Source: Styela clava (lineage: Eukaryota). Taken from it: 64,000 nt of DNA. Made by a program: the position numbers and the translations under genes. The stretch covers positions 13,640,001 through 13,704,000 of the forward strand of contig NC_135252.1 in NCBI RefSeq assembly GCF_964204865.1, written 5' to 3'. Below are positions 35,110-55,489 of the stretch, piece by piece (within the stretch, counting starts at the first letter, position 1; every line of letters begins with the position of its first letter). A model generated the notes under the pieces. That model was not told the DNA's origin and ran no database searches. It saw only the letters and a list, made by a program, of their open reading frames with translations.

Positions 35110-38100
35110 ATGGTGAAAGAATTTGTCTTCAAGATTTGCATTTTTCTGTGGACTGTTCAAGTCATTCAATCAGGCAATTTCTCGCCCAAGCAAGATGACC
35201 CGAGTAAGTCAAACTTTACGTACTGTAAAACATATCACATATGTGGGCTATAGTTTCCGTGTACCGGTACCGATCTTCAAAAACTTCAAAAGATTCGTTT
35301 TTTATGTGTCAGAATAAATAGCGACACCTTGTGACGTGTTTCATATATTTAGCATAGCTCTCTTGTTATAAAGTGTTGTGTTTCTACAAGATTTACTATA
35401 TCTGATGTTCTTCATAATCGCACATAGTCAAACACTTCTAATTGTAACCACGTTAATGGCTTCAAAATTCCCCAAGCATTTTCCACGACAGGACGGTCTT
35501 ACTTTAAGTAATCCGGTCGAAACGGGAAATGACTCATTATTTTAGTGATCTCATGGCTCTTCAATACAATCTTTAATAATTATCTAATAAAACATGTTAG
35601 TTGGATAACTCGACAAAACCGTACGGTGCTCTTCTACAATAACAGTAGTTTCGCAACTAAAACTACCGATCTTTTCAATGAGGTATCAGAACCTTGGATG
35701 TCGCTGCCAGATAAACAACTTTGGTTCCTCGAGGTTTCCCTTTTCCATTAGAACTGTATGATTGTATGACTGATTTTTGAGTGTATGGAAAAATAAAATT
35801 GACTTGACTATTAGGAGATTGAATTTATATTCTGTTTACAATTTTTTTAACAGTTGCCTGCAAAGAAGGAGATTTCAGATGTTTGGATGGGAAAAAGTGC
35901 ATCCCTTTTCATATTTTTTGCGACGAAAGAGCTCACTGCGAGTAAGTACATTTCTGAATTTGGAAACAAGATTAGCTCATACTAAAATTGGTATGGTTAT
36001 ATTTATTGGACACGTCAGTGGACATAACGATCGTTTTGCATTTCATGGTGGCACTCTTCTTCTTGTTGTTGTTCTTTGTCACAGAGAAAAAACGATTTTC
36101 TCTTTGATTACTGAACCAATCTCTTTAAAAATGTCAGTGCTTGAAGATTAAATTTTTCGCTAGAAGGCTATTGCTTTTATTTCAAATACTCCGAGAGATG
36201 GAAGCGACGGAATACCGTACTGGCAATCATAAGATATAATGTACCGAAGTATTGTGCATTCGTCTAAATACTCTAAGTAGTTTCAGATGCTGTTCAACGT
36301 CTATAAATTCTCTATACCCATAGCTGTTGCACTGAGCGGCATTAAAAAGTGCATATTTTAGTATATTTTAAGATGGTCAATACCTATTTCATATTTGCTG
36401 GTGTATTATCACAGTGATGGAAGCGATGAAGTTTTGTACAATGCTTCTATTCACACCGCCGATGATGGTGTTCCATGCCGAGGTTATGAGGATTTGACAA
36501 GAGTTTGTTTACTTCACAATTCTGTTGCAGAAAGAGAAGAACACATATGCAATAAAAGTAAAGGGTTTGAATGTTTTGAAAATATTCATTATTTTACCAT
36601 TTTGTTGAATTAAGGATTATAATCAAATAACGATTGAATAAATATAAGTCGAGTGAAATCAATTACTAGCGAAATTGAATTTGACCTGATCGCGTTATTA
36701 TATAGCCTTTTACTCACTAGAGCTGAATTAATAAAAACCTTGCCTAGACATCTAAACCAGATGTATAAAAACATAATAGGCCTACTGCCATGACAATATA
36801 ACATTGAAATTATTTACGTCTTGGGTACGTTCAGAACGTGAGTGTCTAGGTGGATTCTTCACGTGTTCCGATAAATCAAGATGTGTGGATAAAGAACGTT
36901 ACTGCGATGGAAACCCAGACTGTAGGTATGTAGTATGACTTCTTACCTTGATGCGGCGCTAACAAACAAACTCTAAGATTGAATTCATTCTCTGCAGTGA
37001 TGGAAGCGACGAAATTGTGTACAATGCCTCAATTCATACAGAGGAAGATGGTTATTCTTGCTACATGGATGAATGGCAATATCCAAACTGTCTACTTCCC
37101 GTAGGAGGACATCCAAATCCGCATGATTGGTGTGATCCCGGTGGGCATGCCTCATTGTTACAAATTCACGTTATGTTCAAGGCATTGAAATGGTAATGTT
37201 GTCTGGTGTGAGTTTCGATCAAACTATGCCGTGTACTAGATGTCTCATATGAAGAGATACAGTTTCGAACGCCGTAGTTTTTAAGGGATTAAGGTGATAT
37301 TGAACATTACCCGGTTGCTTCCTGTACTTTGGCTACAAGTTACAACGTGCTTTTAATTGTGCTTAATGGGTGCATTATTCAAATATTCAAGCCCTCATTT
37401 TACCTAACCTGGTCCATATTTATGTAATTATATTTTCGAATAAAAAGTTTTCAAATCCTTCCGACATTGCAGAAGTAAACTGTAGTCCAGATGAGTTTTT
37501 ATGCGAGGATGGAAAGCAGTGTATTCCCAAGACACGATATTGCAACTTAGAAAAAGACTGCAGGTATACATCTAATTTACAACAAATCAACTTATTCTGG
37601 TACTAACTGAATGTGTTAGTAGACATCATCTGTGTTTACATGATCTTAGAAAAATTATCCGTCTATGTTGCAAACTGTAACGCTTTTCGTAAACATCAGC
37701 ATATGACGCGTACCCATTCATCAGCGATTTTCCACGGAGAAATGACCACCTATCTTGTTAAATGACTAATCAATTTGTCAGTTATTACCATTGGCCATAA
37801 AAGCGATTACATCTCTCAAAATTTTTAAAATGAATACTGTCGTTAGAAGTGGAATGAATCAGTACACGGATTTAAAATACAGTCAGTTTTTACAAATATT
37901 TTTACAAGGGATGGAAGCGATGAAATTGTCTACGATTCGTCGATATTAAAACCAAATGACCACAGAGTTAAATGTAGAAGTTTTGCAAAAGTAGATCACT
38001 TCTGCTTACTGGGAGGAAAATTTGTTTTTGATGAAGAGGATTACTGCAATTTAAACGACACACCACCTGTTCAAGGTAACCAGAATTTATTAGGATTTCA

Positions 38101-41100
38101 TAATAAGTGAAGATTCGCATGTAATTGAAGCATTTTCATGCCACTAGAATGCAATAACAATCTTCTTACAATTTTCCAACAGTTGCCTGCAAAGAAGGGT
38201 ATTTCAGATGTTTGGATGGAAAAAAGTGCATAAATTTTTTTGATTTTTGCGACGAAAGAGTTCACTGCGAGTAAGTTCATTAACAAATTAAAAATAAAAT
38301 TGAAATTTATGTTTGTGCATTTCCGTATTTTATTTTGTCATCCTGCTTATTCTGATTTAGAGACGGAAGTGATGAGATATTGTTCGACTCAGCGATTCAT
38401 ACACCAGACAACGGAGTGTCGTGTCAAAATAAATTTAGAGACAGATTCTGTCTTCTACCACCCGATTATGATTCTTCAAAGCATTGTTTTTCTATCGAAT
38501 TTGATTGTCTTCCTGAATGGTTTATCTGTGCTAGTGGAACTCAGTGCGTTTATAAAGAATCATTTTGTGACGGGAATTCATATTGTCGGTAGGTTGTCCC
38601 TTAGATGGAAATTTTATAATCGCTTCGTTAACACTCAAAAGCAGCAAAAAGTGGCAATTATTAGATATAAAGTATCGAAGTTTTGTGCACTCGTCTAAAG
38701 TTTCAGATGCTCTGCACCTTCTATATACTTATAATACTTATATCTGTTTCATTGATCACTGAGCGACAGCAAAAGGTGACTATTTTAGTATATTTTGAAG
38801 TGGTACTTGCTATTTCGTTTTTGCTAGTCATATTCATCACTCAGATGAATAGATGGCCATTTCAATATCACATTTGAAATGCCAAATGCGTGTACAAAAT
38901 CATAGATATAAGTGTATTATCACAGTGATGGAAGCGATGAAGTTTTATACAATATTTCTATTCACACCGCCGATGATGGTGTTCCATGCCGAGGTTATGA
39001 AGATTTGACAAGAGTTTGTTTACTTCACAATTCTGTTGCAGACAGAGAACAACACATATGTAATAAAGGTAAATAAATAGTACGAATGTTTTGAAAATAT
39101 TCATTATCTTACCATTTTGAGTAATTTAAGATATATATATAATCAATGATTGGGCTGAATGATTGACTGAATATAAGCTTTGTAAAATCAATTACTGGCG
39201 AAATTGAATTTGATATTTATTTGACCTGATCGAGTTAATATATTGCTTTTTACTCATTAGAGATGGATAAATAGAACCATTGCCTGGCCATCTAAACCTT
39301 ATGTATAAAAGCATAAAATACCTACTCTCATAACAATATAACACTGAATTTGTTACGTCTTATGAATGTCAAAATGTGAATATTTATATACTTGGATATG
39401 TTCAGAACGTGAGTGTCTAGTTGGATACTTCAGGTGTTCTGATAAATCAAAATGTGTTGATAAAGAACGTTACTGCGACAGATACCCAGATTGTAGGTAT
39501 GTTGGGTAATTTCCTACCTTGATTCGGGCGCTAACAAACTAACTCTAAAATTGAGTTCATTCTATGTAGTGATGGAAGCGACGAAATTGTGTACAATGCC
39601 TCGATTCATACAGAGGAAGATGGTTATTCTTGCTACATGGATGAATGGCAATATCCAAATTGTCTACTTCCCGTAGGAGGACATCCGAATCCGCATAATT
39701 TTTGTGATCCCGGTGAGCATGCGTCATTGCTACAAATCCATGTTATGTTTAGTACATTGAAATGATAATGTTGCCTGGTGAGAGTTATGATCAAAGTATT
39801 CCGTGTATCGATATGTCTCCTATGAAGAATAACAGTTTCTACTGCCGTAATTATTAGGGGATTAAGGTGATATTGAAAATTATCCGGTTGCTTTCTGTAC
39901 TTTGGCTACAACGTGCTATGAATTGTGCTTAATGGGTGCATTTTGCTCACATATTCAAGCCCTCATTTTTTTTACCTAACCTGGTCCATGTTTATGTAAA
40001 TATATTTTCGAATTGAAAGTTTTTTAAATCTATCGGGCATTACAGAAGCACATTGTGGTTCAGATGGGTTCTTATGCGAGGATGGAAAGCAGTGTATTCC
40101 AAAGACACAATATTGCAATTTGGAAAAAGACTGCAGGTATACATCTAATTGGGGTATCAACTAAATGTGTTAATCGACACGAGCTGTATTTACGTGTTCT
40201 TAGAAGAATTATTGTATGTCTATGCTGCTTACTATAACGCTTTTCATAAACATCAGCATATTGCCGTTTCCCATTCATCAGCTATTTCTCTTGGGCAACT
40301 GACCACATATCTGGTTAAATGAATAATCAATTTGTCAGGTTTTATTTTTGGTCATAAAAGGCATGATGATTATTAAATGATTATTGTGGTTAGAAGTGAA
40401 AAAAATTAGTACACAGATATTTGGTCAGTTCCTACAAATATTTTTATAAGGGATGGAAGCGATGAAATTGTCTACGATTCGTCGATATTAAAACCAAATG
40501 ATCACAGAGTTAAATGTAGAAGTTTTGCAAAAGTAGATCACTTCTGCTCATTAGGAGGGAAATTTGTTTTTGATGAAGAGAATTACTGCAATTTAAAGGA
40601 CACACCGCCTATTCAAGGTAAGCAGGGTTTATTGGAATTTTGTTAGAAGTTAAGATTCGCATGTAATTGAACATTTTACATATCACGATACCCGGAGAAA
40701 GTATTTACAATGCTCTTACAACTTTTCAACAGTTGCCTGCAAAGAAGGGTATTTCAGATGTTGGGATGGAAAAAAGTGCATTCATTTTCATAATTTTTGC
40801 GACGAAAGAGTTCACTGCGAGTAAGTTCTTTGATAAAATAAAAATTTGGAAATTGAATGGAAATTTTTGTGTATCTCCTTATTTTATGCTGTCATGCTAT
40901 TTATTCTTGCTTATTCTGATTCAGTGACCGAAGTGATGAAATATTGTTCGACTCAGAGATTCACACACCAGACAATGGAGTGTCGTGTCAAAACAAATAT
41001 AGAGACAGATTCTGTTTTCTACCTCACGAATATGATTCTTCAAAGTATTGTTTCTCTATCGAATTTGATTGTCGTCCTGAATGGTTTGTCTGTGCCAGTG

Positions 41101-44100
41101 GAACTCAGTGTGTTCATAAAGAAGCATTTTGTGACGGACAACCCTATTGTCGGTAGGTTGTTCCTTTTGTGAAGTTTTTAATGTTTGTTCTACTGAAAGA
41201 TAGAGGGAAATATTTATATCTTCATTTGTTGGTCATTGACTTCTCAGGTTTTCAATAATGTGTATCATTTGTTATACTTTTATTTCCCCTAGATTGACTG
41301 TCGTTGGCTGACGTCTGCAACAGTACTTTTCGGAGCAATTAATACTGTTTGCCATCTATACTATTTTTTTATACTTCTAACTGCTAGGCATTGACCATAT
41401 ATATGGTCATTATAAGGGTGCTATCAAAAGACTCTCATACCTGTTTAATTTTGTTTGATTGCTAGTCATATTTATCAGATAAATGAACGTTCATTTCAAC
41501 GCCTAGATTGAAATTCAAAATTACTGAATTAAACTATAATATAAATGCATTATTTCAGTGATGGAAGTGATGAAGTTTTGTACAATGATTCTATTCACAC
41601 CGCCGATGATGGCGTTCCATGTCGAGGTTACCGAGATTTGACAAGAGTTTGTTTACTTCATAATTCTGTTGTTGACAGAGAAGAACACATATGTAATAAA
41701 GGTAGAGAGTTGAAATATTTTGAAAATATTCAATTTCTGAAATTTCAGATATACTCAAAGATGAGATAAGTGATTAAATAAAAAATATAAGCTGAATAAA
41801 TTTTTGGCAAAATTGAAATTGATATTTTTTAAATCAGACAGAATTATTATATTTACTCAGTAGAAGAATATTTATGAAAAATCTTGCATTTCAATCTAGA
41901 CGTCTAAATGTATATATTAAAAATATTATTGTCATTTAAATACAATATTGACATTAATATGCATCTTTTTATTGACAAAATGTATTTTTTTTTGTATCTT
42001 TGGATATGTTCAGAACGTGAGTGTCTAGTTGGAAACTTCAGGTGTTCCGATAAATCAGAATGTGTGAATAAAGAACGCTATTGCGACAGAAACCCAGATT
42101 GTAGGTATGTTGCAAAATTTTCTACACTGTAAAAATGTATACATTTTGCGGTTTCGACGTTATTTATCATTGAATTTATTCTCTGCAGCGATGGAAGTGA
42201 CGAAATTGTATACGATGCCTCAATTCATACAGAGGAAGATGGGTATTCTTGTTACATAGGTGAATGGCAATATCCAAATTGTCTACTTCCCGTAGGAGGA
42301 CATCCGAAACCGCATCATTTTTGTGACCCCGGTAAGCAGGCCTCATTGTTATAAATTCAATTCGAGTTTGGTGCTTTGATAAAATTTTAATGGATGTTGA
42401 TAGATACGATCAATAATTTTCGTGCACTATATGTGTCTTCTAAGCTAAAAGAATTTAAATCGACGCAATTATCATGGGGTTAAATTAATATAGTAGTACC
42501 CAGGAGCATTCTGTACTTGGCCACTAGTAGTGAAAGCATTTTGCTCGAATGTATGTCCCGATCTTAGCAATGTTATCCATTCTTATTTACACCTAATCGA
42601 ATCCAAATTCAATTTCTACTATTAATTCATTTGTTATTACAGAAGTGGAATGTCCCTATGGATTCTTATGTGAGGATGGAAAGCAATGTATTCCAAAAAC
42701 ACAGTATTGCAATTTGGAGAGAGACTGCAGGTACTAACTTAGTTTACTATAATACAGCTTTGAGTGGTAACTGAATATTTTAGCATAGTTTTAAAAATTT
42801 CTTCTTGTCTACGCTGCTAATCAAAATTTTCTCCAAACATCGGACTTTGACGGTATACTGTCCACCAAATTTCACCCTTTGTGAACAAGTGCGATTTTAC
42901 GTTGATAAATATTCTGAAATTGTTTAACCTCATTATACACTTAAAATTATTATGTAATGATGCTAAGCTCATTACTATAAGTTTTTTTTCTCTCAAGGGA
43001 TGGAAGCGATGAAATTGTCTACAATTCGTCAATATTAAAACCAAATGATCACAGAGTAAAATGTAGAAGTTTTGCAAAATTCGATCACTTCTGCTTATTA
43101 GGAGGAAAATTTGTTTTTGATGAAGAGGATTACTGCAATTTAAACGACACACCGCCTATTCAAGGTAACCAGAATTTATTAGAATTTTATTTAAAGTGGA
43201 GATTTGCATGTAATTGAACATTTTACAAACCACGATACCTGGAGAATGCATTAACAATCTTCTTACAATTTTTCAACAGTTGCCTGCAAAGAAGGGTATT
43301 TCAGATGTTGGGATGGGAAAAAGTGCATCGATTTTCATAATTTTTGCGACGAAAGAGTTCACTGCGAGTAAGTTCTTCAATAAGATAGAAATTAAAAGTT
43401 TGAAAAATAAAATTGAAATTTTTGTGTATCTCCTCATTTTATTTTGCCATCCTATTTATTCTTGTCTATTCTGATTCAGTGACGGAAGTGATGAAATATT
43501 GTTCGACTCAGATATTCACACACCAGACAACGGAGTGTCGTGTCAAAACAAATATAGAGACAGATTCTGTTTTCTACCTCACGAATATGATTCTTCAAAG
43601 TATTGTTTCTCTATCGAATTTGATTGTCGTCCTGAATGGTTTGTCTGTGCCAGTGGAACTCAGTGTGTTTATAAAGAAGTATTTTGTGATGGATATTCCA
43701 ATTGTCGGTAGGTTGTTTCTTTTGTGAAGTTTTTAATGTTTGTTCTACTGAAAGATAGAGCGAAATATTTATGTCTCCATTTGTTGGTCATTGACTTCTT
43801 AGGTATTCAATAATGTGTATCACTTGTTATACCTTTATCTCCTCTAGATTAACTGTCGTTGGCTGATGTCTGCAACAGTATTTTTCGGAGCAATTGATAC
43901 TGTTTGCCATCTATACTATTTTTTTATACTTCTAACTGCCAGGCAATGATCATATGGTCGGTAAAAGGGTGCTATCAAGAGTCTCATACCTGTTAAATTT
44001 TGTTTGATTGCTATTCATAGATAAGAACGTCCATTTTTCAACGTCTAGATTGAAATTTGAAATTACACAATTAAATTATAATATAAATGCATTATTTCAG

Positions 44101-47084
44101 TGATGGAAGTGATGAAGTTTTGTACAAAGATTCAATTCACACCGCTGGTGTACCATGTCGAGGTTATCAAGATTTGACAAGAGTTTGTTTACTTCATAAT
44201 TCTGTTGTTGGCAGAGAAGAACACATATGTAATAAAGGTAGAAGATTGAAACATTTGGAAAAGATTTGATTTCTGTAATTTCAGATATACTCAAAGATGA
44301 GATAAATGATTAAATAAATATAGTTAAAAAATTTTGGCGACATTGAGTTTGATATATTTCTTAAATCAGACTGAATTATTATATTTACTCACTAGAAGTA
44401 GATTTATGAAAAATCTTACATCTTCATCGAATTCTAAACCTAATGTATAAAACAAATATTATCATTTAAATACAGCAATATTTAAATTAGTATGCACCTG
44501 ATTAATGGCAAAATGTAATTATTTTATATTTGGATATGTTCAGATCGAGAGTGTCCAGTTGGATACTTCATATGTTCTGATAAATCAAGATGTGTGGAAA
44601 AAGAACGCTTTTGCGACAGAAACCCTGATTGTAGGTATGTTGCACACTTTTCTACACTGTAACAATGTATACAATGGTGCGGTTTCGAGGTTATTTATCA
44701 TTGAATTCATTCTCTGCAGCGATGGAAGCGACGAAATCGTATACAATGCATCCAGATTCATTCAGATGAAGATGGGTATTCTTGTTACATGGGAGAATGG
44801 CAATATCCAAATTGTCTACTTCCCGTAGGAGGACATCGGAAACCGCTTCAGTTTTGAGACCCCGGTAAGCATGCCTCATTGTTACAAATTCAAGTCAAGT
44901 TTGGTGCTTTGATAAAAAGATAATGAATGATGATAGATACGATCAATAATTTCCGTGCATTACATGTGTCTTCTAAAGTAAAACAATTTGAAACAACGCA
45001 GTTTTCATGGGGTTTAATTAATATAGTAGTACCCTAGAACTGCCCTGGCTACTTGTAGTGAAAGCATTTTGCTCGAATGTATGCTCCAATCTTAACAATG
45101 TTATTCATTCTTAAGTACATCTAATATAAGCCGAATTAAATTTCTACGATTAAGTTCCCCTGTTATTGCAGAAGTGGAATGTCCCTATGGATTCTTATGT
45201 GAGGATGGGAAGCAATGTATTCCAAAAACACAGTATTGCAATTTAGAAAGAGACTGCAGGTACTAATTTAGTTTACAACAAAACAGCTCCGAGCGTAACT
45301 GAATATTTAGCAAGTTTTTAATTGCTAATTGAAATTTTTACTCAACATCGGACTATGATGGTATATCGTCCACCAAATTTCACCCTTTGTGAAAAAATGT
45401 TTTTACGTTGATATATTATCTGGAATTATTTAAAATTATTATGTAATGATGCCAAGTCTATTCCTATAAGTTTTTTTCTCTCTCAAGGGATGGAAGCGAT
45501 GAAATTGTCTACGATTTATTGACATTGGAACCTAATGACCACAGAGTCAAATGTAGAAGTTTTGCAAAAGTCGATCACTTCTGCTTACTAGGAGGAAGAT
45601 TCACTTTTGATGAAGGGGATTTCTGTAATTTAGGCAAGCTAATTCACTTGTTATAGTAGTATAAGAAAAATGTTTAGTGAATTCTCCATTATATACTATA
45701 TATTATATAGGAAGTGACATGGCTAGAACTCACAAAAGGTTTAACTTTATTTCTGATTCAGCAATATAAATTATACCTTGAAAATAGATTCTGAATGAGA
45801 AGTTGTAGAATTCTGCATATCGACGAATCAGCAAATAAAACAAAAGATTTTTTTGTTATTTTTAGAATGTTCTGATGACAGTTTCATGTGCGACGACAAA
45901 TCAAAATGTATTGAACGCCATCGATTTTGTGACGGGATAAAAGACTGCGCGTAAGTCATTCCCGATGCAACATTACTTTTTTCCCAAAAATTGAACACGC
46001 TGTCTGTACTAAAAGAATATATTTCTACTATTTTACTTCTCAGCAATATCGAGCTGTGACTTTTTAATCCTGTACTTTTGAATTTGTATGCGATCTGTGT
46101 AATTATTTTCAGTGATGAAAGTGACGAAAGAAGATTTAATGAATACAAAGACAAAATTAAGGGTGTTGGATGCAGAAGTTGGACTCTGTTGAGTCGTATT
46201 TGCTTGTTGCCCACTGATCAGGCTAATAAAAGAAAGAACATTTGTAACGTTGGTTAGTTTGAATTATTGTTTCGTAGGACTAAATTGTATTATAAGGGCT
46301 TTGAAAGTACTCAAATAGTTGATATTAGTATTAATCAAGTTACAATTACAATTGTAAATAAATTCTACACTAATATATATCGATATAAACATTATAAAGC
46401 CTATAAATGTACTTGTTCTGAATATGATTCTTAGCAAAATTGGGGTGCGTTGCTAATACCTTTATTTTTGCATCTTCGTAATGGTAACCAGAGACGGTAA
46501 TTTGTTAATCGGAAAACTCCAGTGAGCTCCTTACACTTTAAGCTATTATCTGTATTACGATACAATTCCTGGTTGAATAATTCTGTTTCTACACCGCGAA
46601 AGTCGTGCCCAGACAAAAATGAGGGAGTGTGTTTCTGACGAATCTAAAGAAAAAGAATGATAAACACCACCACAACCCATACGCTTAATGCGACTAACTT
46701 CGTCATCTACTATTATTTTAGCACCTCGTAGGTGCGATGCAGGGTTTTTCAGATGCTTGTCAGGAATGAAATGCATTCCGAAAGAAAAATTTTGCGATGG
46801 AAGACGAGATTGCAGGTGATGAAATTTACCATTATGTTCAACTAGGAAAGACTAAATAATTTTACGCCAAGTATTTTTTGAAATCACGTCGATAGTCATT
46901 GTCGAAATCGCATTGAAGTTGTAAAAATATATGAGAATCATTTTTTTGCAGGGATGATGAAATAGAATATGACGAGGCAATCCATAGTCCAGATATTGGA
47001 GTTCCATGCCAGGGAAGAAATGGAAAGATCTGTCTCCTCCCTTCAAAATTCAAATCTAACAATCACACTAACATCTGTACATGA
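35110..47084 (+). CDS. Secreted multi-LDL-receptor-class-A-like repeat protein (17 modules, 32 exons, ~1362 aa ancestral frame); exon 44720-44864 disrupted
   Basis: Signal exon 35110-35203 (MVKEFVFKICIFLWTVQVIQSG...). Then exons 35854-35941, 36415-36557, 36835-36925, 36998-37140, 37473-37563, 37909-38075 | 38183-38270, 38361-38588, 38926-39068, 39406-39496, 39570-39712, 40046-40136, 40451-40617 | 40733-40820, 40925-41152, 41559-41701, 42014-42104, 42189-42331, 42643-42730, 42998-43164 | 43280-43367, 43480-43707, 44101-44237, 44544-44634, 44720-44864 (broken), 45172-45259, 45488-45633 | 45866-45950, 46113-46252, 46722-46815, 46952-47084 (TGA). Phases are consistent. Repeated CxxxxFxCxDxxxCIxxxxxCDxxxDCxDGSDE motif, no C-terminal TM segment, AATAAA at ~47275. 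Confidence 0.85.
35820..45640 (+). repeat. Four tandem genomic units (~2.3-2.55 kb) including introns
   Basis: The exon starting TTGCCTGCAAAGAAGG recurs at 35854, 38183, 40733 and 43280. Neighbouring exons and much intron sequence repeat in the same order. Confidence 0.95.
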
Positions 47085-47634
47085 AACGAAGATGTGGACA
47101 GTGCATGAGTTGAGCTATGTTGTTGTTAATATGTTTTATGGCGCTCAAAACATCTGTGGTTATTTGAGTCTAGCTTATAAGTGAAATCGCAATTTCAGAA
47201 TCTGACAAATGCGGATTTTTGTTGTAGCTGTGCGTATCGGTGTTATTTGCAAAAATGTAATGGGTGAAAATTGCAATAAAAATATTATATCGACTCCTAT
47301 GGTAATGCATGTATAACATATGAAACGATGTCTTTAATGTTCTCTGTTCAGAGATCTACACAAAACAAGTCAGCAAGTCCGAACGCGACCCAAACCAGAC
47401 CTTAGATGAAATAGTTGACTTCAAAATTCTGTAACAAAATGATATATTAATGCTGCAAATATGCTTAAGTGTAGAAATTATTATTATTATTAATGTACCA
47501 GGAGATGACAAGCTTGAGCAAACATTACGATGAAGTTTAATTATTGAATAACAGTTCACTCTTCACTGAATGACTTTTCAAAACGGCCAGTTACTCATGT
47601 CCCTCGTCATTATCGCTTTTCATTGTCACCAGGT

Positions 47635-49345
47635 TTAAGCATTCATCCAATCAGGATACATTTTCTCCCAGTCATTTGTAATATTCATCAAATGTGGCCA
47701 CAACACCTTTGACACAAGTTGATTTCCTTTTTCCGAGAAATGTAAACCGTCTTTTAACAACTCTCCTAAATCTAATTCCGAATTCATAAATTCTTCCCAT
47801 AAATTTACGAATCCACATAACTTTGTTGAAGCCACCTGAAAGGAAACAGCATAACCAGAAGTTCATTAAAAAAAATTGTAATATATACTCAATTGTTTCT
47901 AAACACCCTTAAATACATGGGAAGTTTTTGATTGATTTTTTTTATAAACAAAAAATTACAGGCATGTATATAATATGGTATAGATATGAAAAAAATCACT
48001 ATAAATATCGATTGTACCGATCACATAATTATGTATTTAGTCACATTAATTTCCAGATATAAATAGTGTGAAATCAACGATTTTTATATATACTGGTATA
48101 TAACGTGTGTCCACATAACTGATTAAGAGTGGCTCCGTCAGTTAGTAGTAAACGTCTTCAACGAAATATCTTTCTTCAAACTAGTAACTAAATACCTTTC
48201 CACAAGTATCAGCATACAATTTAACAAAATCATTATCTTTATTGCAAACGATGCCGCTTTTTCCATCTTTTAAAAATTTTGTCCACATCTAAATGTAAGC
48301 GCAGTGTTAAAAAAAATGAACGTCTTGTGAACACATCGCGGAAATTCATGCAATTTCTTATCTCCTAATCTTAACACACAAATAGATACTTGCTGTGTGT
48401 TTAATTTCCTTTTACCATTTTTGACATTCTTTGTGTCTTTCTTATCTGTGGAGTTTTCTGAAAACATATATATTATATATATATATTATTAAAAAATGAC
48501 CTAAATTATTACCTCGGGTTCTGTCGCTGGAGGAGACACCACAATGATCTGAGATGCAGGCAGTCCTAGTAGCTGAATGAAGTGTTCGATAAGTTTATGA
48601 AGATTGCTCTCAAATTCTTGTATCGGAACATGCTGCGAGAATCCGGGAAGGAATGAGTCGTTTGCTCCGAAAAATATAACGACAACATCCGATGGCTGTT
48701 ATAAAATGGAATTACGTAATGATCAAACAATTATTCATTAGTCTGTCTGAATTTGAATGAACTAACATCAGATCTGTACAACGATCAATACAGGTTAGAG
48801 GTTCAACGGACAGCACTTCTGAATTTGAAACCGCCGGTATGCTGTTAACGTTCAACACAAAATAGCCTCAAATATTTATACTGCTGTACTAATAATTGTT
48901 GTCTTCTCTTCGATGTCTAACTCAACAATCATTTTTCAAGCAGTGGGCCACAAAATATAGGCCTACGTACGCCAACTGATCCACTAGGAAACATATCATT
49001 TAGCCGGCCCACTGCATTTTTAGTTCAATACCCTTCAAATACCTCTTAATATATATTTATATATATATTGTAGGCTACTAATAAATGTTGTCTTCTCGTT
49101 GGTGTCTAACTCAACAATCATTTCCCAAGCGTGCCACATAATATACTTACGCCAACTGATCCACTAGGAAACAAATCATTTAGCAGGTTCACTGCATTTT
49201 TCGTGCAATACCCTTCAAAACCTCTGTTCAAGACATCTGCTTTTCTCTGTAATTGATCAGCTATAGCTGAACCAAATCCTTGCGGCTGAAACGAGTACTG
49301 GGTCAACGAATCTCCGAAGAAAATCAGTTTCCGCCACGTTGGCAT
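47635..49345 (-). CDS. IAH1: Isoamyl acetate-hydrolyzing esterase 1-like SGNH/GDSL hydrolase, copy A (223 aa)
   Basis: Exons 49345-49151, 48695-48513, 48288-48196, 47835-47635 (all phase 0). Motifs FGDSLTQ, NRGFEGY, FFGANDS, QHVP and DGLHFSEKGN are typical of IAH1. Confidence 0.9.
48887..49046 (-). repeat. Degenerate tandem copy of the IAH1-A exon1/intron1 junction
   Basis: Aligns with ~49075-49226 (CGCCAACTGATCCACTAGGAAAC...CCCTTCAAA), with substitutions and small indels. Confidence 0.9.
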
Positions 49346-50229
49346 GATTGTATACTATATATAACAAAATTACAGTGCTGAAATACTACCTTATGTTGCC
49401 GATATTAGGCCAATGCAAACAAGGTAAATCGGGCAGTATGTTTGTCTATCGGTGGTATGTATACTGCCGTCAGTTGGGAACCAGCGTTTGCCTTATTTTG
49501 ACCAAATAGCATAACGAGCACGTTCCAATCCCAAACAAATATAGTACGGTTCCGTGAAGTCAAAATTTTGTTGTAATGGCAGAAAAACCGTAAATAATGA
49601 TAGGGTAACTGCTAAACTAGTTTTATATGCATAATAATATATACTTGAGTATCATCCAGGTAGTTTTATTGAAATGTGTGAACACGAATAACCCATGCTC
49701 AGTAATACAGCATTAGTTACAGGTACAATTAGTTAGCGAAAAAACGCAGACTTATAGCTAAATATATATATATAATTGGTGTCTACATATGCCGTAAGAA
49801 TGAACTTAATAGCTCTTACCTTGTCATTGGTAGTTTGCGACTATTTCATTCAATGTTCTTTCTAATCTTTTTCGACATAGCGTGCAAAACAGCCTGAGAA
49901 ACAACGCAGTTTCGCTGTCTATATATACCCTAAGGAGAAATAACGATCAGGCGAAGAAAGCAATATAAGAACTTCTTTTCTGGGGCTGTTTCAACATTGA
50001 TTTGCTATCGAAGCCTAATTAATAGCTACCACGTGAAAGCAAACAGCGGAATGCTATATGCGGATCGAGAACGGAAAGATTTGGTTGCATTACATACATT
50101 CAGCCAGGCTGGCGATTCTTTAGGGTATTATGCAATAAGAAGAATCAAAAGATCAACAAAGTACACCATTCAACAAAATTATAAATTGTATTGCGTAATC
50201 CAAATTATCAAGCTTTGCAACTAGTGTCT

Positions 50230-50365
50230 AGTGATCTCCAAACGGTAAACTCTGTTCTTCACGGTACATTTTAAAGTAATCTTAGTTATTCACTCATAAG
50301 TACGCAACCCCATCAATTGAGGTTGTAATGCCACCACGAATAGCTTCCAAGTTTGAGAAACCACT
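50230..50365. mobile_element. Degenerate short hAT-like MITE
   Basis: AGTGATCTCCAAAC ... GTTTGAGAAACCACT form imperfect terminal inverted repeats. No convincing TSD. Confidence 0.35.
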
Positions 50366-50433
50366 TCCATGGAAAACATCATTTATTTCCTCACAATAAA
50401 TTACCTAATGTCTTATTCACCAAAACTCATTTA

Positions 50434-52574
50434 TTATAAATCATAAAACGTTTGCCATTCTGCATAATTCATTTCCCACTCTTCAGACATCTTAAGTATA
50501 TGCGGAAGAATTAGCTTCGTAACTAATCGATTTCCTTCCTCTGAAAAATGAAGTCCATCGTTCAGTAACTTGTTATACTCTTCCTCTCGCATAAAACTCT
50601 CCCACAAGTTTACAAACGGACAAGACATATCCGACGCAATCTGTTATGGAATATTAGCATTATTTAGCCGCCCTTATTTCGAATAATCAATAAAGTAATG
50701 AATGTATACCCGTGAGCAGGCTTCGGCATATTTTTTTGTATTTTCGTTGTCTCTGTCAACCTCTGTTCCTTTGTTCTCTGATATTAAGTGTGCCAACCAT
50801 TTCTGTGTGTGAGATATAAGAATTACAATCAGTTTGCCTGTACAGACCCTTGTTTGGAGCGCCGAAGGTAAATGGTATAAATATATTTCCATATGAAAGC
50901 ATATGAAATAAGCTCTTTAAACGATATGATATTGCAATGAATGAGCTGTGGACTTATATGCGATGGCTATTCGTGGAGACGAATGCAGCAAAATCGATGT
51001 AGTCTAAATTCATAATCTGGTATTATTAATTACGATAAATAACAAGAGAGCTATGCTCAAATATATGGACACGTAGCGCCACCTGATGGCAAAAAAATTG
51101 ATGACGTCATAGCAACAAAAAAAGTAATAGCTTTCTGAAGAAAATTTTTATCTTTAACCATTGAAAATTTCAAAGCAATTGGTCCAGTAATCAAAGAAAT
51201 AAGCGACTTTTTAAAAACGTGTCAAAGAACAAGAACAACAACATAATATTGAAACGATCGCTATGTCCACTATGTGTCCAAAAACACAGCAGTCCCAATA
51301 AATGAGAAACCTACAATACCTCTGTATCAACTACTGGGGGAGATATGATGAGTATTCGCGATGATGGCAATCCAAGTCCTGTAAGGTGGTTGATAATTTT
51401 GCGACAGTTGGATTCATATCTTTGTATAGGAACGTGCTGATGAAAGCCGCTTAGTACAGAATCGTTTGCCCCGAAGCAAACTGTGATGGCATCCTCGGCC
51501 TAAGAAACGAAATACGGACATTGGCGATACAATTACTAAAAATTAACTGGTAAATTTAAAATCATCTGAATAGGTATACTAATCCCAATTAATAAACTAA
51601 AGCAGTGGTCTCGGATAATTTCCTTCCACACTATGCTACTATAAATATATTTGTATGATCTTTAATGGGTCCTAAGTTAATTTTATGCCTAACTTACACT
51701 CTGGCTTTTGCACCTTAGAGTAATTTATAATGTTTGCATAAATATGTATTATAATAATGAAGAATACAAGTAATACTGCAGCAAATACAATGCGAAATTT
51801 CTCCAAGGAATCAACAAAATTGCTCTGTGACAAGGAATTCCTCCTCGGTATGGAAACATGGAAATAAAGTCTTTAAACTGGTTGGATAAACTTGTTTTGC
51901 GTTCACCATGCAAGATAGTGATATACTTTTGAATTACAATTTTCACGGGCAACTATTCAAAAGTATTGTGGTGATAATTCACACAAGCAACTACTGCTAG
52001 TGTGAGGTGTTCAACCACTCAATCGATCTGAACGAGCCGAAAAACAATGCCAGAATGCCTAGTATGGGTCACTACTCACTATGATGTCGCTTTCTCTCCA
52101 AGCTACGTTCTGTACACATGATTACCATAACATGGCCGACCGTATCCATGTGTGAGTTCGCTCCATAGTACTCTCAGTATATACAGTAATAATGAACTAT
52201 TTGAACTTCGGTACGATATCTGCGGACAACATGGTTCTCGTAGTTTTCCGAGACAACCATTCACAGAGCCGATATTATTGACTGTATTCCCTCGGGTGAA
52301 AGCGGGAAGTATACATCTTATTCAATTTATGAAACAGGGAAGTGGAACTACTGTGGCTTCGAGTCGACACCTTTCTTACCTTGAGAGAGCCAGTGGGAAA
52401 TACGCCGTGCAACATTGCAACTGCATTGTCTGTGTTGTAACCTGAAAATCCTCGGTTAATTACGTCCGCCTTTCTCTGTAGTTCATTTGCGATTGCTGAA
52501 CCGAATCCTTGAGGCTGGAAGGAATATTGCGTCAACGAATCGCCGAACAAAATCATTTTTTTCCAAGCAGCCAT
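50434..52574 (-). CDS. IAH1: Isoamyl acetate-hydrolyzing esterase 1-like SGNH/GDSL hydrolase, copy B (224 aa)
   Basis: Exons 52574-52380, 51499-51320, 50802-50710, 50640-50434 (all phase 0), with the same intron positions as copy A. Motifs FGDSLTQ, NRGFSGYNT, FGANDS and DGLHFSEEGN. Confidence 0.9.
51041..51282. mobile_element. Short non-autonomous repeat (Helentron/DINE-like architecture) in an IAH1-B intron
   Basis: Begins AACAAG (CTTGTT end on the minus strand). Subterminal inverted repeats TGGACACGTAG (51066-51076) / CTATGTGTCCA (51270-51280) and an internal AAC-rich simple tract. Confidence 0.5.
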
Positions 52575-54394
52575 AGCCTACCTGTTACTACAAAGGACGG
52601 TACCACGCTGAACTACGGTACTTCCGTAAGCCACTTTCATTATGCTTGGGGTCTTGAATAATGTATTGAGTTTGGGCTTTGCGTTATCAAAAATGTACAA
52701 CTCGCAGACAAAGTAAATAACAATACGCATTCAAGCCAGTGCCAAGCGCGCCTCACTGCCTTCTGCGAAATTGAATTCCGCGGAAACCATCGCTGCGTAG
52801 ATTCCGACAACAGGGTTAAAATAAACTTATCATTTTTTTCTGGTTGGAAAAAATAAACTTGACCTGACTTGACGCTCATGATATAGTATGCTGGCTGCTT
52901 TTGGGTGTACTAATACAATGGTATTCGCGTTATTTATAATATTTATTTTAAGCTTCGCCATGGTACAAAAATGAAAAATCTATAATTGGACTTTTAAGCT
53001 TTAACAATACATACCTGCGTCATATTGCCAGTAGCAGTGGAAATACAAACGATGAAGCGATAATCTTAAACTCAAAATTACACATGGTCTGGACACAAAT
53101 AAATTATTTTTTCGTGCTATTTAGTTTTTCATTATTGCCCGTGTATTTTCGAGGATGACGGATGGAACTGCTTTCAAGACCGTTTTTTTTCAAAATTATA
53201 ATGATTTAGGCTAGTTACCTGTAACATGGTTTACGCGACTCAGAATACGAATTAGTGTAAACAACGACTGATCTTTGTTTTCCTGTTTCCAGTGTTTCGC
53301 AGGTTAGTGATAAACTTCGATAGCCCGCGTTAAGCTGTTTGTTTATTACGTGTTCAAATCATCGTAATCGGTGTGAAGACAGATGCTGCAAGTGCTGAAG
53401 TGGGAGAAATCAACTTACCAATTTGCGAATAAACAAACAAAATGTTATCATGTCGCTCAAATTAGCGAATTGGCCTAGTTTTGCGTTTGACTTGCTCAGT
53501 TTTTTACGAGAAAGTCATTTGCGGTAATAATGTTTGGTCGTAAAAGGGCATTACAAAGATTGATAGCTAAAGAAAGAAATTGGTTAATTTCAGTAATTTA
53601 GAGTTTAGCTGCAAGAATTGTTATGTCCGTATGGCGGCTTCGTGAATCGACGAATTCGTACGCAAAATCAAAAATATGATAGCAAGAGGATGGACAAGCA
53701 GGTGAAGTGTTAATTTCATTACAAAATATAGACTATGTAATTTATATGGCAGAATAGCAGACACACTTTCAGGCACTTGTGGGTCTGAGGACGAGGTCAG
53801 ACCATGTAGCTGGACACGGAATACTGGAATAGGTGTATAAGACATCTGTTCTTATCTTCTAACAACTAATTGGCCAGGTTGAATAAACTGTTGGCTAAAA
53901 TCGCTTTATTTCATACAGTCATATCTCAGATTTAGTTAAACAGCGATAAACTGGATATTGGTAAGACATGATTATAAATACAGAATCAGATGACATAAAC
54001 CTGTAAAAAGATATTATACTGTAGTAGTTTGAGAATGTATAAACTCTATATTATACACAATAACCACTCGAATAAACAAAAATAATTATCATAATTAATA
54101 CTATTTATTGATTGAAACTTTTATTTTGATACTATTTTATGTTTATGACCCCATTTTAGGTAATTTTGAGATTTTTGTTATGGGATAAACTGGAGAAAAT
54201 CCAACTGGTCTCTAAAGCAGTGAATCTCGTGAAAGTCAAACTATCAGTAAGTAGGGTGTAGCTCAAATGAATATGATTTTTTGGATTCGATCAGTAAATC
54301 TAATAATGTTATTCAAAATATGAAGTACTGTACATTCATATAAATAAATTTCATTGTCTTGCAGAATTTTTTGTTACGAAATTTTTCTGTAGCA

Positions 54395-55489
54395 ATGGGT
54401 GTTGTCCACAAACTGCTATACAGAGTTACCAATGCTAAATTGTACTTGTGCATTGGAATCGTATTATGTACAATGACAATGGGATTTACAACATACTTTC
54501 TGAGGCATGGATTAGATTCCAATTACAACCGTGTGATCAAAAGTGAAGGTTTCCAAGGAAAAAGATCATTTGATATTGAAAACGAATTATTCGCTGAGGC
54601 AGAGTTGATGTCAAAAAGTAGTCTTTCTACGGCAACAGTGGTTGGTAAAGTTTTTGCTCCACCAACAGTGAGGACGAAAAATTATATGGATAAAATTATT
54701 TACAACCGTGTTGGAAAATGTGGCAGTCGATCAATGTTGTCTTTGATCACAAGGCTTTCTAGCCGGAACAACTTTCTGTTTTATGCTTCACCTGTGTCAA
54801 ATCGAACAAGAGTTCCTCTTCCAGAATCGATCAAAGAAGTTCAAGTTATAAATAATCTACCTTCCCCTAGCATTTATTCTAGACATATTCACTATCTCGA
54901 TTTATTCAAATATGGTATTTCTGGAGTTGTTTATATAAACATGATAAGAGATCCTATTGAAAGATTCTCTTCCCAGTATCATTTTTTACGATATGGTGAT
55001 GGTATTAAGGCACAAGGAAGACGCTATGAACCGTGGGAGGGAGGTGATAAAGATATGGACATAAACGACTGTATTCTGAAAAACCATCAACTGTGTACTG
55101 CTGGCAGATTATTTTATGTAGTGCCATATTTTTGTGGTCAAGATTTTTTGTGCCATCGTCCATCAAAGGAAAGTTTGTACAGAGCTAAAGTTCATGTCAT
55201 GGAAAATTACTTGGTTGTTGGATACTTGGAGGATTTCACAGGCATGCTCCAAGTCCTTGAGAAATTACTACCACAATTTTTTACCGGTTCTTTAAAACTT
55301 TGGAAAGATATTTCAGCAGACACAATGATTAATACATCAACATTAAAGAAACAGAAAATAAATGAGACTGCATATGCTGTGCTAAGGGAAAGAATGGAAA
55401 TTGAATATGATTTCTATAATTTTGTCAAAACTCGTTTTAGGATTATCAAAAAACAAATGGAGATTTTTGACGATGACGAAGCCTTGTAA
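54395..55489 (+). CDS. UST: Uronyl 2-O-sulfotransferase-like Golgi type II membrane protein (364 aa, single coding exon)
   Basis: N-terminal TM segment (LYLCIGIVLCTMTMGFTTYFL). 5'-PSB motif YNRVGKCGSRS is UST-type rather than HS2ST (NRVPKTAS). 3'-PB motif YINMIRDPIERFSSQYHFLRYGD and RLFYVVPYFCGQ. Splice acceptor ttgcag at 54364 lies upstream of the ATG. Confidence 0.9.
   Translation: MGVVHKLLYRVTNAKLYLCIGIVLCTMTMGFTTYFLRHGLDSNYNRVIKSEGFQGKRSFDIENELFAEAELMSKSSLSTATVVGKVFAPPTVRTKNYMDKIIYNRVGKCGSRSMLSLITRLSSRNNFLFYASPVSNRTRVPLPESIKEVQVINNLPSPSIYSRHIHYLDLFKYGISGVVYINMIRDPIERFSSQYHFLRYGDGIKAQGRRYEPWEGGDKDMDINDCILKNHQLCTAGRLFYVVPYFCGQDFLCHRPSKESLYRAKVHVMENYLVVGYLEDFTGMLQVLEKLLPQFFTGSLKLWKDISADTMINTSTLKKQKINETAYAVLRERMEIEYDFYNFVKTRFRIIKKQMEIFDDDEAL

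What the first reader, a model, noticed from the sequence alone, without database searches (positions are those of the whole stretch)
35110..47084. Secreted 17-module array of an atypical 8-Cys LDLa-like repeat
Seen: each module has LDLa Cys1-5 and the acidic DGSDE motif, but the sixth Cys, canonically 2-3 residues after DE, is absent. Instead there is a ~40-aa extension [IV][LV][YF][DN]xxIHxxDxGxxC-x8-9-CLL-x8-13-C, giving 8 Cys per module. The protein has a signal peptide, no EGF/YWTD/LRR/TM parts, and ends ...NICT*. Established: LDLa modules bind ligands through a Ca2+ cage. Inference: a soluble multivalent binding or scaffold protein made only of a variant module (e.g. egg coat, allorecognition or pathogen/ligand decoy). 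The extension reminds me of spacers in tunicate multi-LDLa GPCR ectodomains (unverified recollection).
Basis: partly seen in the sequence, partly recalled or inferred. Interest (0 to 1): 0.8.

Follow-up and report, generated by a model that had tools for sequence, protein, structure and literature searches.

The report
Secreted array of 8-cysteine LDLa-like modules
A sea-squirt gene encodes a secreted protein built only from repeats of an unusual eight-cysteine version of the LDL-receptor binding module, a version otherwise seen here only at the tips of orphan sea-squirt signalling receptors.

Summary
Window 35110-47084 (+) is a 32-exon gene of Styela clava (LOC120342772). It encodes a signal peptide and 17 modules. 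Each module has an LDLa part (Cys1-5 and an acidic SDE loop) and a roughly 40-residue, 3-Cys extension. No Pfam family, PDB sequence or solved fold matched the extension. In this assembly the second exon of module 14 carries a 2-nt insertion and a stop. An older public protein model has that exon intact and has six more modules.

cDNA-like contigs from two studies show 10 of the 15 introns laid, including one GC-AG intron. They also show the signal-exon junction and read unspliced through the stop codon. The array grew by tandem duplication of a 2.55-kb, four-module block. Exons are 86-92% identical between copies, against 55-83% for introns, and dN/dS is 0.15-0.29.

A profile of the extension found only 20 proteins among 1.84 billion. 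The named ones are all S. clava, and they include LRR-less multi-LDLa GPCRs of the "LDLRR-GPCR" type described in Ciona.

My best reading is a soluble, TM-less relative of that receptor ectodomain acting as a multivalent binder or decoy. The function is inferred, not shown. It is a new variant of a known kind. Other notes of this scan flag LDLa-GPCR clusters elsewhere in this genome.

The parts
35110..35203 (+). Exon 1: start codon and signal peptide (MVKEFVFKICIFLWTVQVIQS...), donor GTAAGT at 35204
   Evidence: The loose end of the X2 contig equals window 35174-35203 joined to an a-type LDLa exon. The only window with KD>=1.6 in P0001 is residues 1-19.
35854..35941 (+). Exon A1 (module 1, Cys1-5)
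36415..36557 (+). Exon B1 (DGSDE + extension, Cys6-8)
36835..36925 (+). Exon A2
36998..37140 (+). Exon B2
37473..37563 (+). Exon A3 (acceptor cagaag, alternative +3 site)
37909..38075 (+). Exon B3
38183..38270 (+). Exon A4
38361..38588 (+). Fused exon B4+A5 (228 nt, phase 2-2)
38926..39068 (+). Exon B5
39406..39496 (+). Exon A6
39570..39712 (+). Exon B6
40046..40136 (+). Exon A7
40451..40617 (+). Exon B7
40733..40820 (+). Exon A8
40925..41152 (+). Fused exon B8+A9
41559..41701 (+). Exon B9
   Evidence: Joint B9->A10 in contigs of 3 runs.
42014..42104 (+). Exon A10
42189..42331 (+). Exon B10
   Evidence: Joint B10->A11 in X3.
42643..42730 (+). Exon A11
42998..43164 (+). Exon B11
   Evidence: Joint B11->A12 in X1, X2 and X5.
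43280..43367 (+). Exon A12
   Evidence: Joint A12->B12 in all 4 runs.
43480..43707 (+). Fused exon B12+A13
   Evidence: Joint to B13 in X3.
44101..44237 (+). Exon B13 (6 nt shorter than its paralogs)
   Evidence: X5 record 22 joins it to A14.
44544..44634 (+). Exon A14
   Evidence: X5 record 22.
44720..44864 (+). Exon B14, broken in this assembly: 2-nt insertion near 44754-44755 and TGA at 44855-44857 in place of the Cys8 codon
   Evidence: Intact in the older public model P0023. No contig of the 4 runs lies on it.
45172..45259 (+). Exon A15
   Evidence: X5 joint A15->B15.
45488..45633 (+). Exon B15, with a GC donor at 45634 (GC-AG intron)
   Evidence: Joint 45628->45861 with 5 ambiguous letters, in X2 and X3.
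45866..45950 (+). Exon A16
46113..46252 (+). Exon B16 (DESDE)
   Evidence: Joint B16->A17 in X1, X2 and X3.
46722..46815 (+). Exon A17
   Evidence: Joint A17->B17 in X1 and X3.
46952..47084 (+). Exon B17 (shortened acidic loop RDDE), ends ...NICT + TGA. Transcript contig continues unspliced to at least 47302.
   Evidence: X2 record 14 spans 46944-47302.
38183..45865 (+). Three full copies of the ~2.55-kb, four-module genomic unit (38183-40732, 40733-43279, 43280-45865). A three-module copy lacking the fused exon lies at 35854-38182.

Best explanation
SHOWN. The locus is one transcribed, canonically spliced 32-exon gene of the ascidian Styela clava. It encodes a signal peptide followed only by tandem copies of an 8-Cys module. 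Each module is an LDLa domain up to its acidic SDE loop (Cys1-5) plus a ~40-residue extension (Cys6-8). AlphaFold predicts the extension as a beta-hairpin carrying Cys6 and Cys7, followed by a helix ending at Cys8. There is no transmembrane segment and no other domain. The array arose by tandem duplication of a four-module block, is kept under purifying selection, and differs in module number between the two public assemblies. The same module opens the ectodomains of LRR-less multi-LDLa rhodopsin-type GPCRs of the same genome.

INFERRED. The protein is a soluble relative of the distal ectodomain of these orphan receptors. It works as an acidic (pI about 4.8), multivalent and at least partly Ca2+-dependent binder of the same, still unknown, class of ligand. 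It could act as a decoy or buffer, or as a carrier that presents ligand. The haplotype in this window would make a product cut off inside module 14 unless the module-14 exon pair is skipped.
For: Gene model and expression: consensus splice sites with complementary phases. Spliced contigs from 2 studies show 10 of the 15 introns in the laid stretch, the exon 1 junction, and read-through of the stop codon.

Module: Cys counts are 17/17 for the LDLa halves and 16/16 for the intact extensions. LDLa matches are truncated before Cys6. In the AlphaFold model the LDLa part has pLDDT 86-88 and superposes on solved LDLa modules at 0.8-1.4 A over 33-38 columns. The extension folded alone has pLDDT 78.4, with strands 19-22 and 30-33 and a helix 35-45.

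No TM or other domain.

Constraint: exon identity between unit copies is 86-92% against 55-83% for introns. dN/dS is 0.15-0.29.

Kinship with receptors: the extension profile finds 20 proteins in 1.84 billion. They include P0003, which has 5 variant modules, canonical LDLa repeats and 7tm_1. P0028 has the same architecture. The paralog loci share the A|B split-exon structure. Of 242 fetched proteins, 9 have two or more variant modules by my regex. All 9 are S. clava or unnamed transcript contigs, and the only other regex hits are single modules in 5 further S. clava or unnamed Logan proteins, none of them an LRP/VLDLR-type protein.

Kamesh 2008 describes such LRR-less LDL-A GPCRs as orphan, with EST hits mostly from blood and haemocytes.
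Against: No binding, localisation or tissue data exist. The runs are coded, and their label as RNA is the tool's guess, although spliced joints show that cDNA is present.

The acidic pair flanking Cys4 and Cys5 that (from memory) helps cage Ca2+ in canonical LDLa is complete (D/D) in only 6 of 17 modules. It is N/D in 4, D/H in 4, D/Y in 2 and D/N in 1. Many modules may therefore not bind in the classical way.

Exon 14B is broken in this assembly, and NCBI's current model stops there at 1122 aa.

The module tree does not resolve whether the array derives from a receptor gene or the reverse.

Disulfide pairing is unknown. The AlphaFold confidence for the extension inside the whole module is only 71-76.
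Confidence: 0.6

Rival explanations
1. It is a structural extracellular protein (tunic, egg-coat or other matrix scaffold). The disulfide-rich modules would serve as rigid spacers rather than as ligand traps related to receptor signalling.
For: The protein is a long, uniform, acidic, Cys-rich array (110 Cys in 1122 aa, pI 4.76). An N-glycosylation sequon recurs at the same extension position in 6 of 16 modules. The flanking acidic ligand positions are non-canonical in 11 of 17 modules. Copy number varies, which repeat scaffolds tolerate. LDLa modules do occur in secreted scaffold proteins among the structural matches, namely the erythrocruorin linker chains 2gtl_M and 4u8u_M.
Against: The module is shared specifically with receptor ectodomains. 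The four module types are each kept distinct under purifying selection, which fits specific binding surfaces better than bulk material. No matrix-type domains are present.
Confidence: 0.2
2. It is a decaying gene. The array is a lineage-specific expansion that is now being lost, and the broken exon 14B marks a non-functional allele.
For: Exon 14B has two lesions. NCBI's current annotation splits the locus into a truncated 1122-aa model and an 86-aa fragment. No contig from the 4 runs lies on exon 14B.
Against: dN/dS is 0.15-0.29, and exons are far better kept than introns. The 31 other exons are open and have consensus splice sites. Exon 14B is intact in P0023 from the older assembly. An X5 contig specific to exon A15 is preceded by letters that carry the Cys codon, not the stop. 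Skipping the A14+B14 pair would keep the frame. Transcripts are present in two studies.
Confidence: 0.1
3. It is a polymorphic self/non-self or pathogen-recognition molecule whose repeat number and sequence are diversified.
For: The module number differs between the two public assemblies, with six extra modules in P0023. EST hits of the related Ciona receptors came mostly from blood and haemocytes.
Against: There is no excess of non-synonymous change between copies. The variants listed in the contigs cannot be told from paralog mis-mapping. S. clava is a solitary ascidian without colony fusion (recalled, not tested).
Confidence: 0.07
4. It is the 5' part of a longer LDLRR-GPCR gene whose 7TM exons lie outside the window.
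For: All named relatives with several variant modules, other than this gene, are GPCRs or fragments of them.
Against: The in-frame stop lies inside the last exon, and a transcript contig runs 220 nt past it unspliced. The ORFs immediately downstream (47356-52574) lie on the opposite strand. Nothing of P0003 beyond its residue 357 matches the window. The array also lacks the canonical LDLa repeats that precede the 7TM in the paralogs.
Confidence: 0.03

Closest known systems
LDL-receptor class A module (Pfam PF00057), as in LDLR, VLDLR, LRP2, CD320
   Same: Cys1-5 spacing, the conserved aromatic residue, and the D-x-S-D-E acidic loop. Pfam score 335.6 bits over 14 stretches in P0001. The predicted fold of this part superposes on solved modules at 0.8-1.4 A.
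   Different: There is no Cys 2-3 residues after SDE. Instead there are 15-16 residues to the next Cys (12-13 in modules 13 and 17) and a further two Cys, giving 8 in ~78 residues. Profile matches stop at position 35 of 40 in 14 of 14 modules. None of the LRP/VLDLR-type proteins among the 242 fetched shows the pattern. The flanking acidic positions are often substituted.
LDLRR-GPCRs (LRR-less, multi-LDL-A, relaxin-receptor-like orphan GPCRs of Ciona; Kamesh et al. 2008, PMC2396169). S. clava examples are P0003 (LOC120346100) and P0028 (LOC120327042).
   Same: The N-terminal 4-5 modules of the S. clava receptors are the same 8-Cys module with the same intron before DGSDE. P0001 is the best non-self hit of the P0003 ectodomain (E 2.4e-165, 33% identity).
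   Different: The window gene has no canonical LDLa repeats, no 7TM domain and no partial-LDLa junction module. It has 17 modules rather than 4-5. The main-text parts of the 2008 paper that I saw describe the repeats as mostly classical six-Cys LDL-A and do not mention an 8-Cys variant. Its supplements were not seen.
Secreted or soluble LDLa-bearing proteins: annelid erythrocruorin linker chains (2gtl_M, 4u8u_M) and C. elegans NRAP-1 (8v14_B). Also, from memory, the secreted LDLa-only splice variant of the relaxin receptor reported to antagonise signalling.
   Same: LDLa modules used outside a membrane receptor, as scaffold or modulator (structure titles; the roles are recalled).
   Different: Those proteins carry one or a few canonical six-Cys modules combined with other domains. 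Here the whole protein is an array of the variant module.

Membership tests
LDLa domain (PF00057) | Sequence match above Pfam's gathering score | tested here: met
   P0001 scores 335.6 bits over 14 stretches and P0023 scores 402.7 bits over 17 stretches. Single LDLa-half exons score 24.3, 24.3, 32.6 and 29.3 bits against a cut-off of 24.1; the fused exon scores 16.2.
LDLa domain (PF00057) | Six Cys at fixed spacing, with the sixth 2-3 residues after SDE | tested here: not met
   No Cys lies within 12 residues after SDE in any of the 16 intact modules. Profile matches end at position 29-31 of 37 or 35 of 40.
LDLa domain (PF00057) | Acidic Ca2+-binding loop (D after Cys4, D before Cys5, D-E of SDE; ligand positions recalled from the LDLR LR5 structure) | tested here: inconclusive
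   SDE is present in 16 of 17 modules. The two flanking positions are D/D in 6 of 17, N/D in 4, D/H in 4, D/Y in 2 and D/N in 1. Metal binding itself cannot be tested here.
LDLa domain (PF00057) | LDLa fold | tested here: met
   For the Cys1-SDE part only: pLDDT 86-88, Foldseek rmsd 0.8-1.4 A over 33-38 columns with probability 0.96-0.99, and VIA Z up to 4.4.
LDLRR-GPCR (Kamesh 2008) | Rhodopsin-type 7TM domain | tested here: not met
   No 7tm_1 in P0001 or P0023. No hydrophobic segment beyond the leader. No tblastn match to the 7TM of P0003 in the window. The stop lies in the terminal exon.
LDLRR-GPCR (Kamesh 2008) | Tandem LDL-A repeats at the N-terminus without LRRs | tested here: met
LDLR/LRP/vitellogenin-receptor family (the names NCBI gave the models) | EGF and YWTD beta-propeller domains, a single TM, and a cytoplasmic NPxY tail | tested here: not met
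   Pfam finds only Ldl_recept_a and there is no TM. The automatic names 'LRP-like' and 'vitellogenin receptor Yl-like' reflect the LDLa match alone.

The most novel reading that the evidence does not exclude
The 8-Cys unit is a distinct domain class. So far it has been seen only in S. clava and in a few unnamed transcriptome contigs. In it the canonical Cys4-Cys6 staple of LDLa is re-wired onto a hairpin-helix appendage, which may itself be the eroded remnant of a second LDLa. The secreted 17- to 23-module array is then a soluble, copy-number-variable decoy or ligand buffer for the orphan LDLRR-GPCRs. That would give the first experimental handle for de-orphanising that receptor family.
Probability: 0.15. 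Interest if true: 0.7.

Novelty: new variant of a known kind. Interest (0 to 1): 0.5.

Why it matters
LRR-less multi-LDLa GPCRs were described as a lineage-specific expansion in Ciona. In the 2008 paper (section 14 read whole) they are orphan: no ligand, and only EST hints of blood-cell expression. A soluble protein made only of the distal ectodomain module of such receptors is a natural bait. If it binds the same partners, pull-downs with it could identify the ligands, and its presence would imply a decoy layer of regulation.

The module also shows how a very well-studied binding domain (LDLa) can lose its closing disulfide position and gain a three-Cys appendage while keeping its core. That matters for domain annotation, because current models score these modules as truncated LDLa and name the protein "LRP-like" or "vitellogenin receptor-like".

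The locus is also a clean example of exon-phase-compatible block duplication, with apparent copy-number difference between assemblies.

Tried and rejected
- **Tandem Repeats Finder** found nothing, because the period of ~2.55 kb exceeds its limit. The repeat finder gave the unit.
- **Extension as a known domain.** There were no Pfam hits at E<=1 apart from one chance DUF6885 row at E 0.32. There were no PDB sequence hits at E<=10. Foldseek gave nothing at E<=0.001, best E 4. VIA wide gave no chain with Z>=2, though at 47 residues the model is too small for a blank to mean a new fold. The ESM Atlas gave only generic LDLa clusters scoring under 0.9.
- **Extension as a degenerate LDLa half.** hhalign of the extension profile against the LDLa-half profile gave probability 0.6%. 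My own canonical LDLa profile gave only insignificant pieces on 6 extension exons (i-E 0.13-7.9). I rejected this as a demonstrated relationship but kept it as an idea. In the receptor paralogs the last variant module's 'C-L-L-P' aligns as Cys3 of a partial LDLa (profile positions 13-39, i-E 1.2e-5 in P0003 and 3.3e-5 in P0028).
- **Mixed alignments of LDLa-half and extension exons.** These were mis-registered three times by MAFFT (A2, A3, A4) and were discarded. A5 was checked by eye before folding.
- **Disulfide pairing.** It could not be read, because no tool returns model coordinates. Two structural rows spanning model residues 67/70 to 131/132 hint that the 'CLL' Cys may sit where canonical Cys6 does. 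I do not claim this.
- **Taxonomic range.** P0011 found 3 proteins. The P0003 ectodomain and P0006 found mostly generic LDLa proteins, and no named non-Styela protein with the variant module.
- **Module tree.** It is unresolved at depth, with 18 of 30 inner branches open.
- **Literature.** Five searches and the passages I read found no description of an 8-Cys LDLa variant or of this gene. Supplements of PMC2396169 (domain architectures, EST table) were not seen and may bear on whether Ciona receptors carry the same module.
- **Joints discounted as artefacts.** The joint 42728->45486 and the 'goes back' joints I take as paralog mis-placement, not isoforms. A11 and A15 differ at only 3 of 88 bases.

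Full report
**What is there.** The window is AT-rich (GC 0.29-0.39) and lies at G000:C3:13640001-13704000 of a 377-Mb genome. Exact-sequence look-ups name that genome Styela clava.

Six-frame translation of 33-49 kb shows, on the + strand, a regular alternation of two kinds of open segment. 'A' segments read C-x6-C-x5-C-x6-C-x5-C. 'B' segments begin DGSDE and carry three more Cys. With splice-site and phase rules they give a 32-exon model:
- exon 1 (35110-35203);
- 14 separate A exons, which start in phase 1 and end in phase 2;
- 14 separate B exons, which start in phase 2 and end in phase 1;
- three fused B+A exons of 228 nt (38361-38588, 40925-41152, 43480-43707).

All searches of the window's gene were made exon by exon. 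The public proteins that correspond to spliced products were used only as the tools returned them.

**Check of the observation.** All 17 A halves hold 5 Cys and all 16 intact B halves hold 3. Four of the five exon translations containing an A half pass Pfam's cut-off for Ldl_recept_a, always over profile positions 2 to 29-31 of 37. None of the B-only exons matches any Pfam family at E<=0.1.

A canonical LDLa profile that I built from 400 repeats of fetched LRP/VLDLR-type proteins matches 14 of 14 modules of the public model P0001 only up to position 35 of 40. That is just short of the sixth Cys.

The acidic motif is DGSDE in 14 modules, DRSDE in module 8, DESDE in module 16 and a two-residue-shorter RDDE in module 17. 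By eye it is exact in only 6 of 16 intact modules on alignment A1.

The leader MVKEFVFKICIFLWTVQVIQS is the only stretch of P0001 reaching mean hydropathy 1.6 over 19 residues. The receptor paralogs have six or seven such stretches. The frame ends ...NICT, TGA at 47082-47084.

The exception is exon 14B (44720-44864). Compared with its paralogs and with the older public protein P0023, it has two extra bases near 44754-44755. These shift the frame into a TAG at 44826-44828. It also has TGA at 44855-44857 where the others have the last Cys codon. NCBI's current model XP_077966781.1 (P0001, 1122 aa) stops there. A separate 86-aa model (P0008, named 'vitellogenin receptor Yl-like') covers module 17. 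The same lesion is the subject of another first-stage note (s1-807503).

**Expression and gene limits.** Five runs guessed to be RNA hold 8-16% of the sampled words of 41200-47200. I laid contigs of four of them, from two studies, on 41400-47399. They contain GT..AG joints at exactly the predicted boundaries for 10 of the 15 introns in that stretch:
- B9|A10, B10|A11, B11|A12, A12|B12, B12A13|B13;
- B13|A14 (from record 22);
- A15|B15, B15|A16, B16|A17, A17|B17.

The other five were not seen among the rows shown; three further joints were not listed. The B15|A16 joint can only be placed with a GC donor at 45634, so that intron is GC-AG. It is seen in two runs.

A loose end in X2 equals window 35174-35203, the end of exon 1, joined to an a-type A exon. 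X2 record 14 runs from 46944 to 47302 without a joint. That is 220 nt past the stop, so the stop lies in the terminal exon.

The ORFs immediately downstream lie on the minus strand from about 47356. tblastn with the receptor paralog P0003 finds nothing in the window beyond its residue 357. Low-depth contigs also lie in introns of the 46.3-46.9 kb region, so some unspliced RNA or DNA is present in these libraries.

No contig lies on exon 14B. One X5 contig matches A15 with no mismatch, whereas A11 differs from A15 at 3 of 88 bases. That contig is preceded by 11 letters that carry TGT rather than TGA. Those letters equal the end of exon B10 and differ by one letter from the window's B14. This could be an intact B14 allele or a B10-to-A15 splice, and I cannot tell which.

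**How the array was built.** Direct repeats recur every 2.33-2.63 kb. Four module types (by B exon: alpha, beta, gamma, delta) cycle in the order a/delta, b/alpha, c/beta, d/gamma. They give units at 38183-40732, 40733-43279 and 43280-45865. A first unit at 35854-38182 lacks the fused exon and so has three modules. Two divergent modules, 16 and 17, follow.

Between units, exon columns are 86-92% identical and intron columns 55-83%. Nei-Gojobori dS is 0.19-0.49 and dN/dS is 0.15-0.29 over 375-882 sites per pair. The copies are therefore not recent and have been kept under purifying selection.

Each of the four B types forms a starred clade, except alpha (94/96). Deeper branches are unresolved.

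P0023 (XP_039267677.1, 1366 aa, N-terminally partial, from the earlier assembly) is collinear with the window from B9 to B17 at 96-100% identity, including an intact B14. Upstream of that it carries six more modules than the window does. Module number therefore differs between the two assemblies, either as real haplotype variation or through mis-assembly of one of them.

**What the extension is.** A profile of the 16 intact B exons (A1) found nothing among PDB sequences at E<=10. In 1.84 billion representative proteins it found only 20 at E<=0.001. By sequence, P0005 and P0017 are low-complexity repeat proteins that I regard as spurious.

The named hits are all S. clava: this gene (P0001, P0008), P0003 (LOC120346100) and P0004 (a mis-fused older model of the same locus). 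The rest are unnamed Logan contigs.

In the genome itself the profile finds the 16 intact B exons, a weaker partial match (E 2.8e-7) at the broken exon 14B, and 10 further exons at four other places. At three of those places I read the same A-exon/intron/B-exon structure; at C4:20.66 Mb I found only a single B-type match.

P0003 has a leader, five variant modules, further LDLa-like repeats and a 7tm_1 domain. P0028 (LOC120327042, at C4:13.09 Mb) has the same build. The C6 locus is 64-73% identical to the N-terminal part of P0028.

All nine are S. clava or unnamed contigs. It never occurs in the LRP/VLDLR-type proteins.

**Structure predictions.** AlphaFold on a 156-residue public fragment (P0011) used a hand-checked alignment of A and B exons (A5). 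It gave pLDDT 86-88 for the LDLa part and 71-76 for the following extension. The LDLa part superposes on solved modules at 0.8-1.4 A over 33-38 columns, and nothing else matched.

The B1 exon folded alone with 33 rows gave mean pLDDT 78.4. It shows a hairpin (strands 19-22 and 30-33, holding Cys6 and Cys7) and a helix 35-45 ending at Cys8. There was no Foldseek match better than E 4 and no VIA match with Z>=2. At 47 residues, that blank does not establish a new fold.

Profile-profile comparison does not relate the extension to the LDLa half. One hint about origin remains. In the receptors, the last variant module's C-L-L-P is read by the canonical profile as Cys3 of a partial LDLa running to Cys6 (i-E 1.2e-5 to 3e-3 in P0003, P0028, P0002, P0141 and P0238). 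The extension may therefore be the remnant of a second repeat.

Which Cys pairs with which could not be determined.

**Comparison with what is known.** Kamesh et al. 2008 (PMC2396169) defined LDLRR-GPCRs in Ciona. I read passages by term search and section 14 in full. These are relaxin-receptor-like 7TM regions preceded by 1-10 LDL-A repeats and no LRR. There are 14 confirmed members, they are orphan, and their EST hits come mostly from blood and haemocytes. The paper states that most repeats conform to the classical six-Cys structure. The terms 'linker' and 'spacer' do not occur in it. Its supplements were not available to me.

The amphioxus GPCR paper mentions LDLa only in adhesion GPCRs (passages). 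Two further papers that I opened were not relevant (passages).

Five literature searches turned up no description of an 8-Cys LDLa variant or of this gene.

Other first-stage notes of this scan report clusters of LRR-less LDLa-GPCRs and a family of LDLa-only secreted proteins elsewhere in this genome. I confirmed only the two receptors named above.

**Reading.** It is shown that this is a real, expressed, constrained gene for a secreted protein made only of the variant module, and that the module is shared with receptor ectodomains.

The mechanism is inferred. By analogy with LDLa arrays, the acidic loops would bind basic residues of a partner, and multivalency would give avidity. As a TM-less relative of the receptor's distal ectodomain, it would compete for or carry the receptors' ligand.

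Several points weigh against a simple classical mechanism. The two flanking ligand positions are D/D in only 6 of 17 modules. No tissue or binding data exist. This haplotype is interrupted in module 14.

**Verdict.** This is a new variant of a known kind, of moderate interest.

Noticed in passing
window 37473/37476, 40046/40049, 42643/42646, 45172/45175: All four d-type LDLa exons have tandem acceptors (cagaag) 3 nt apart and in the same phase. Use of the second site would drop one residue before Cys1.
   Followed up: no
window 41558-41701 joined to 42190-42305: One X3 contig (record 15) links exon B9 directly to exon B10 with one extra T between them, skipping exon A10. Counted by phase, the product would stay in frame. 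It has 4 and 7 mismatches, so it may come from another copy or be a contig chimera. This bears on the separate note about combinatorial splicing (s1-807479).
   Followed up: partly
P0003 residues 385-412, P0028 311-339, P0002 548-573 (paralog proteins); loci L013, L012, L015: In the receptor paralogs the last variant module runs straight into a partial LDLa that starts at its 'C-L-L-P' (canonical profile positions 13-39). This suggests a composite junction module.
   Followed up: partly
window 47356-52574, minus strand: ORFs at 47635-47835 and 52275-52574 look by eye like exons of a GDSL-type esterase (motif FGDSLTQ), convergent with the array gene. I did not search them.
   Followed up: no
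window 54359-55489, plus strand: A single open frame of 376 aa with an N-terminal hydrophobic anchor. By recollection it resembles a heparan-sulfate/uronyl 2-O-sulfotransferase. I did not search it.
   Followed up: no
window 8438-9289, minus strand: A 283-aa Pro/Ser/Thr-rich open frame inside the region that other first-stage notes describe as a tandem pair of secreted Cys-domain genes.
   Followed up: no
window 46300-46950: Low-depth contigs of run X1 lie on introns between exons B16, A17 and B17. The libraries therefore contain unspliced RNA or some genomic DNA.
   Followed up: no
G000:C6 (96-aa public protein P0025): A 96-aa S. clava model named 'low-density lipoprotein receptor-like' consists of a leader plus exactly one 8-Cys module with a shorter extension. 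It may be a fragmentary model or a one-module secreted relative.
   Followed up: no
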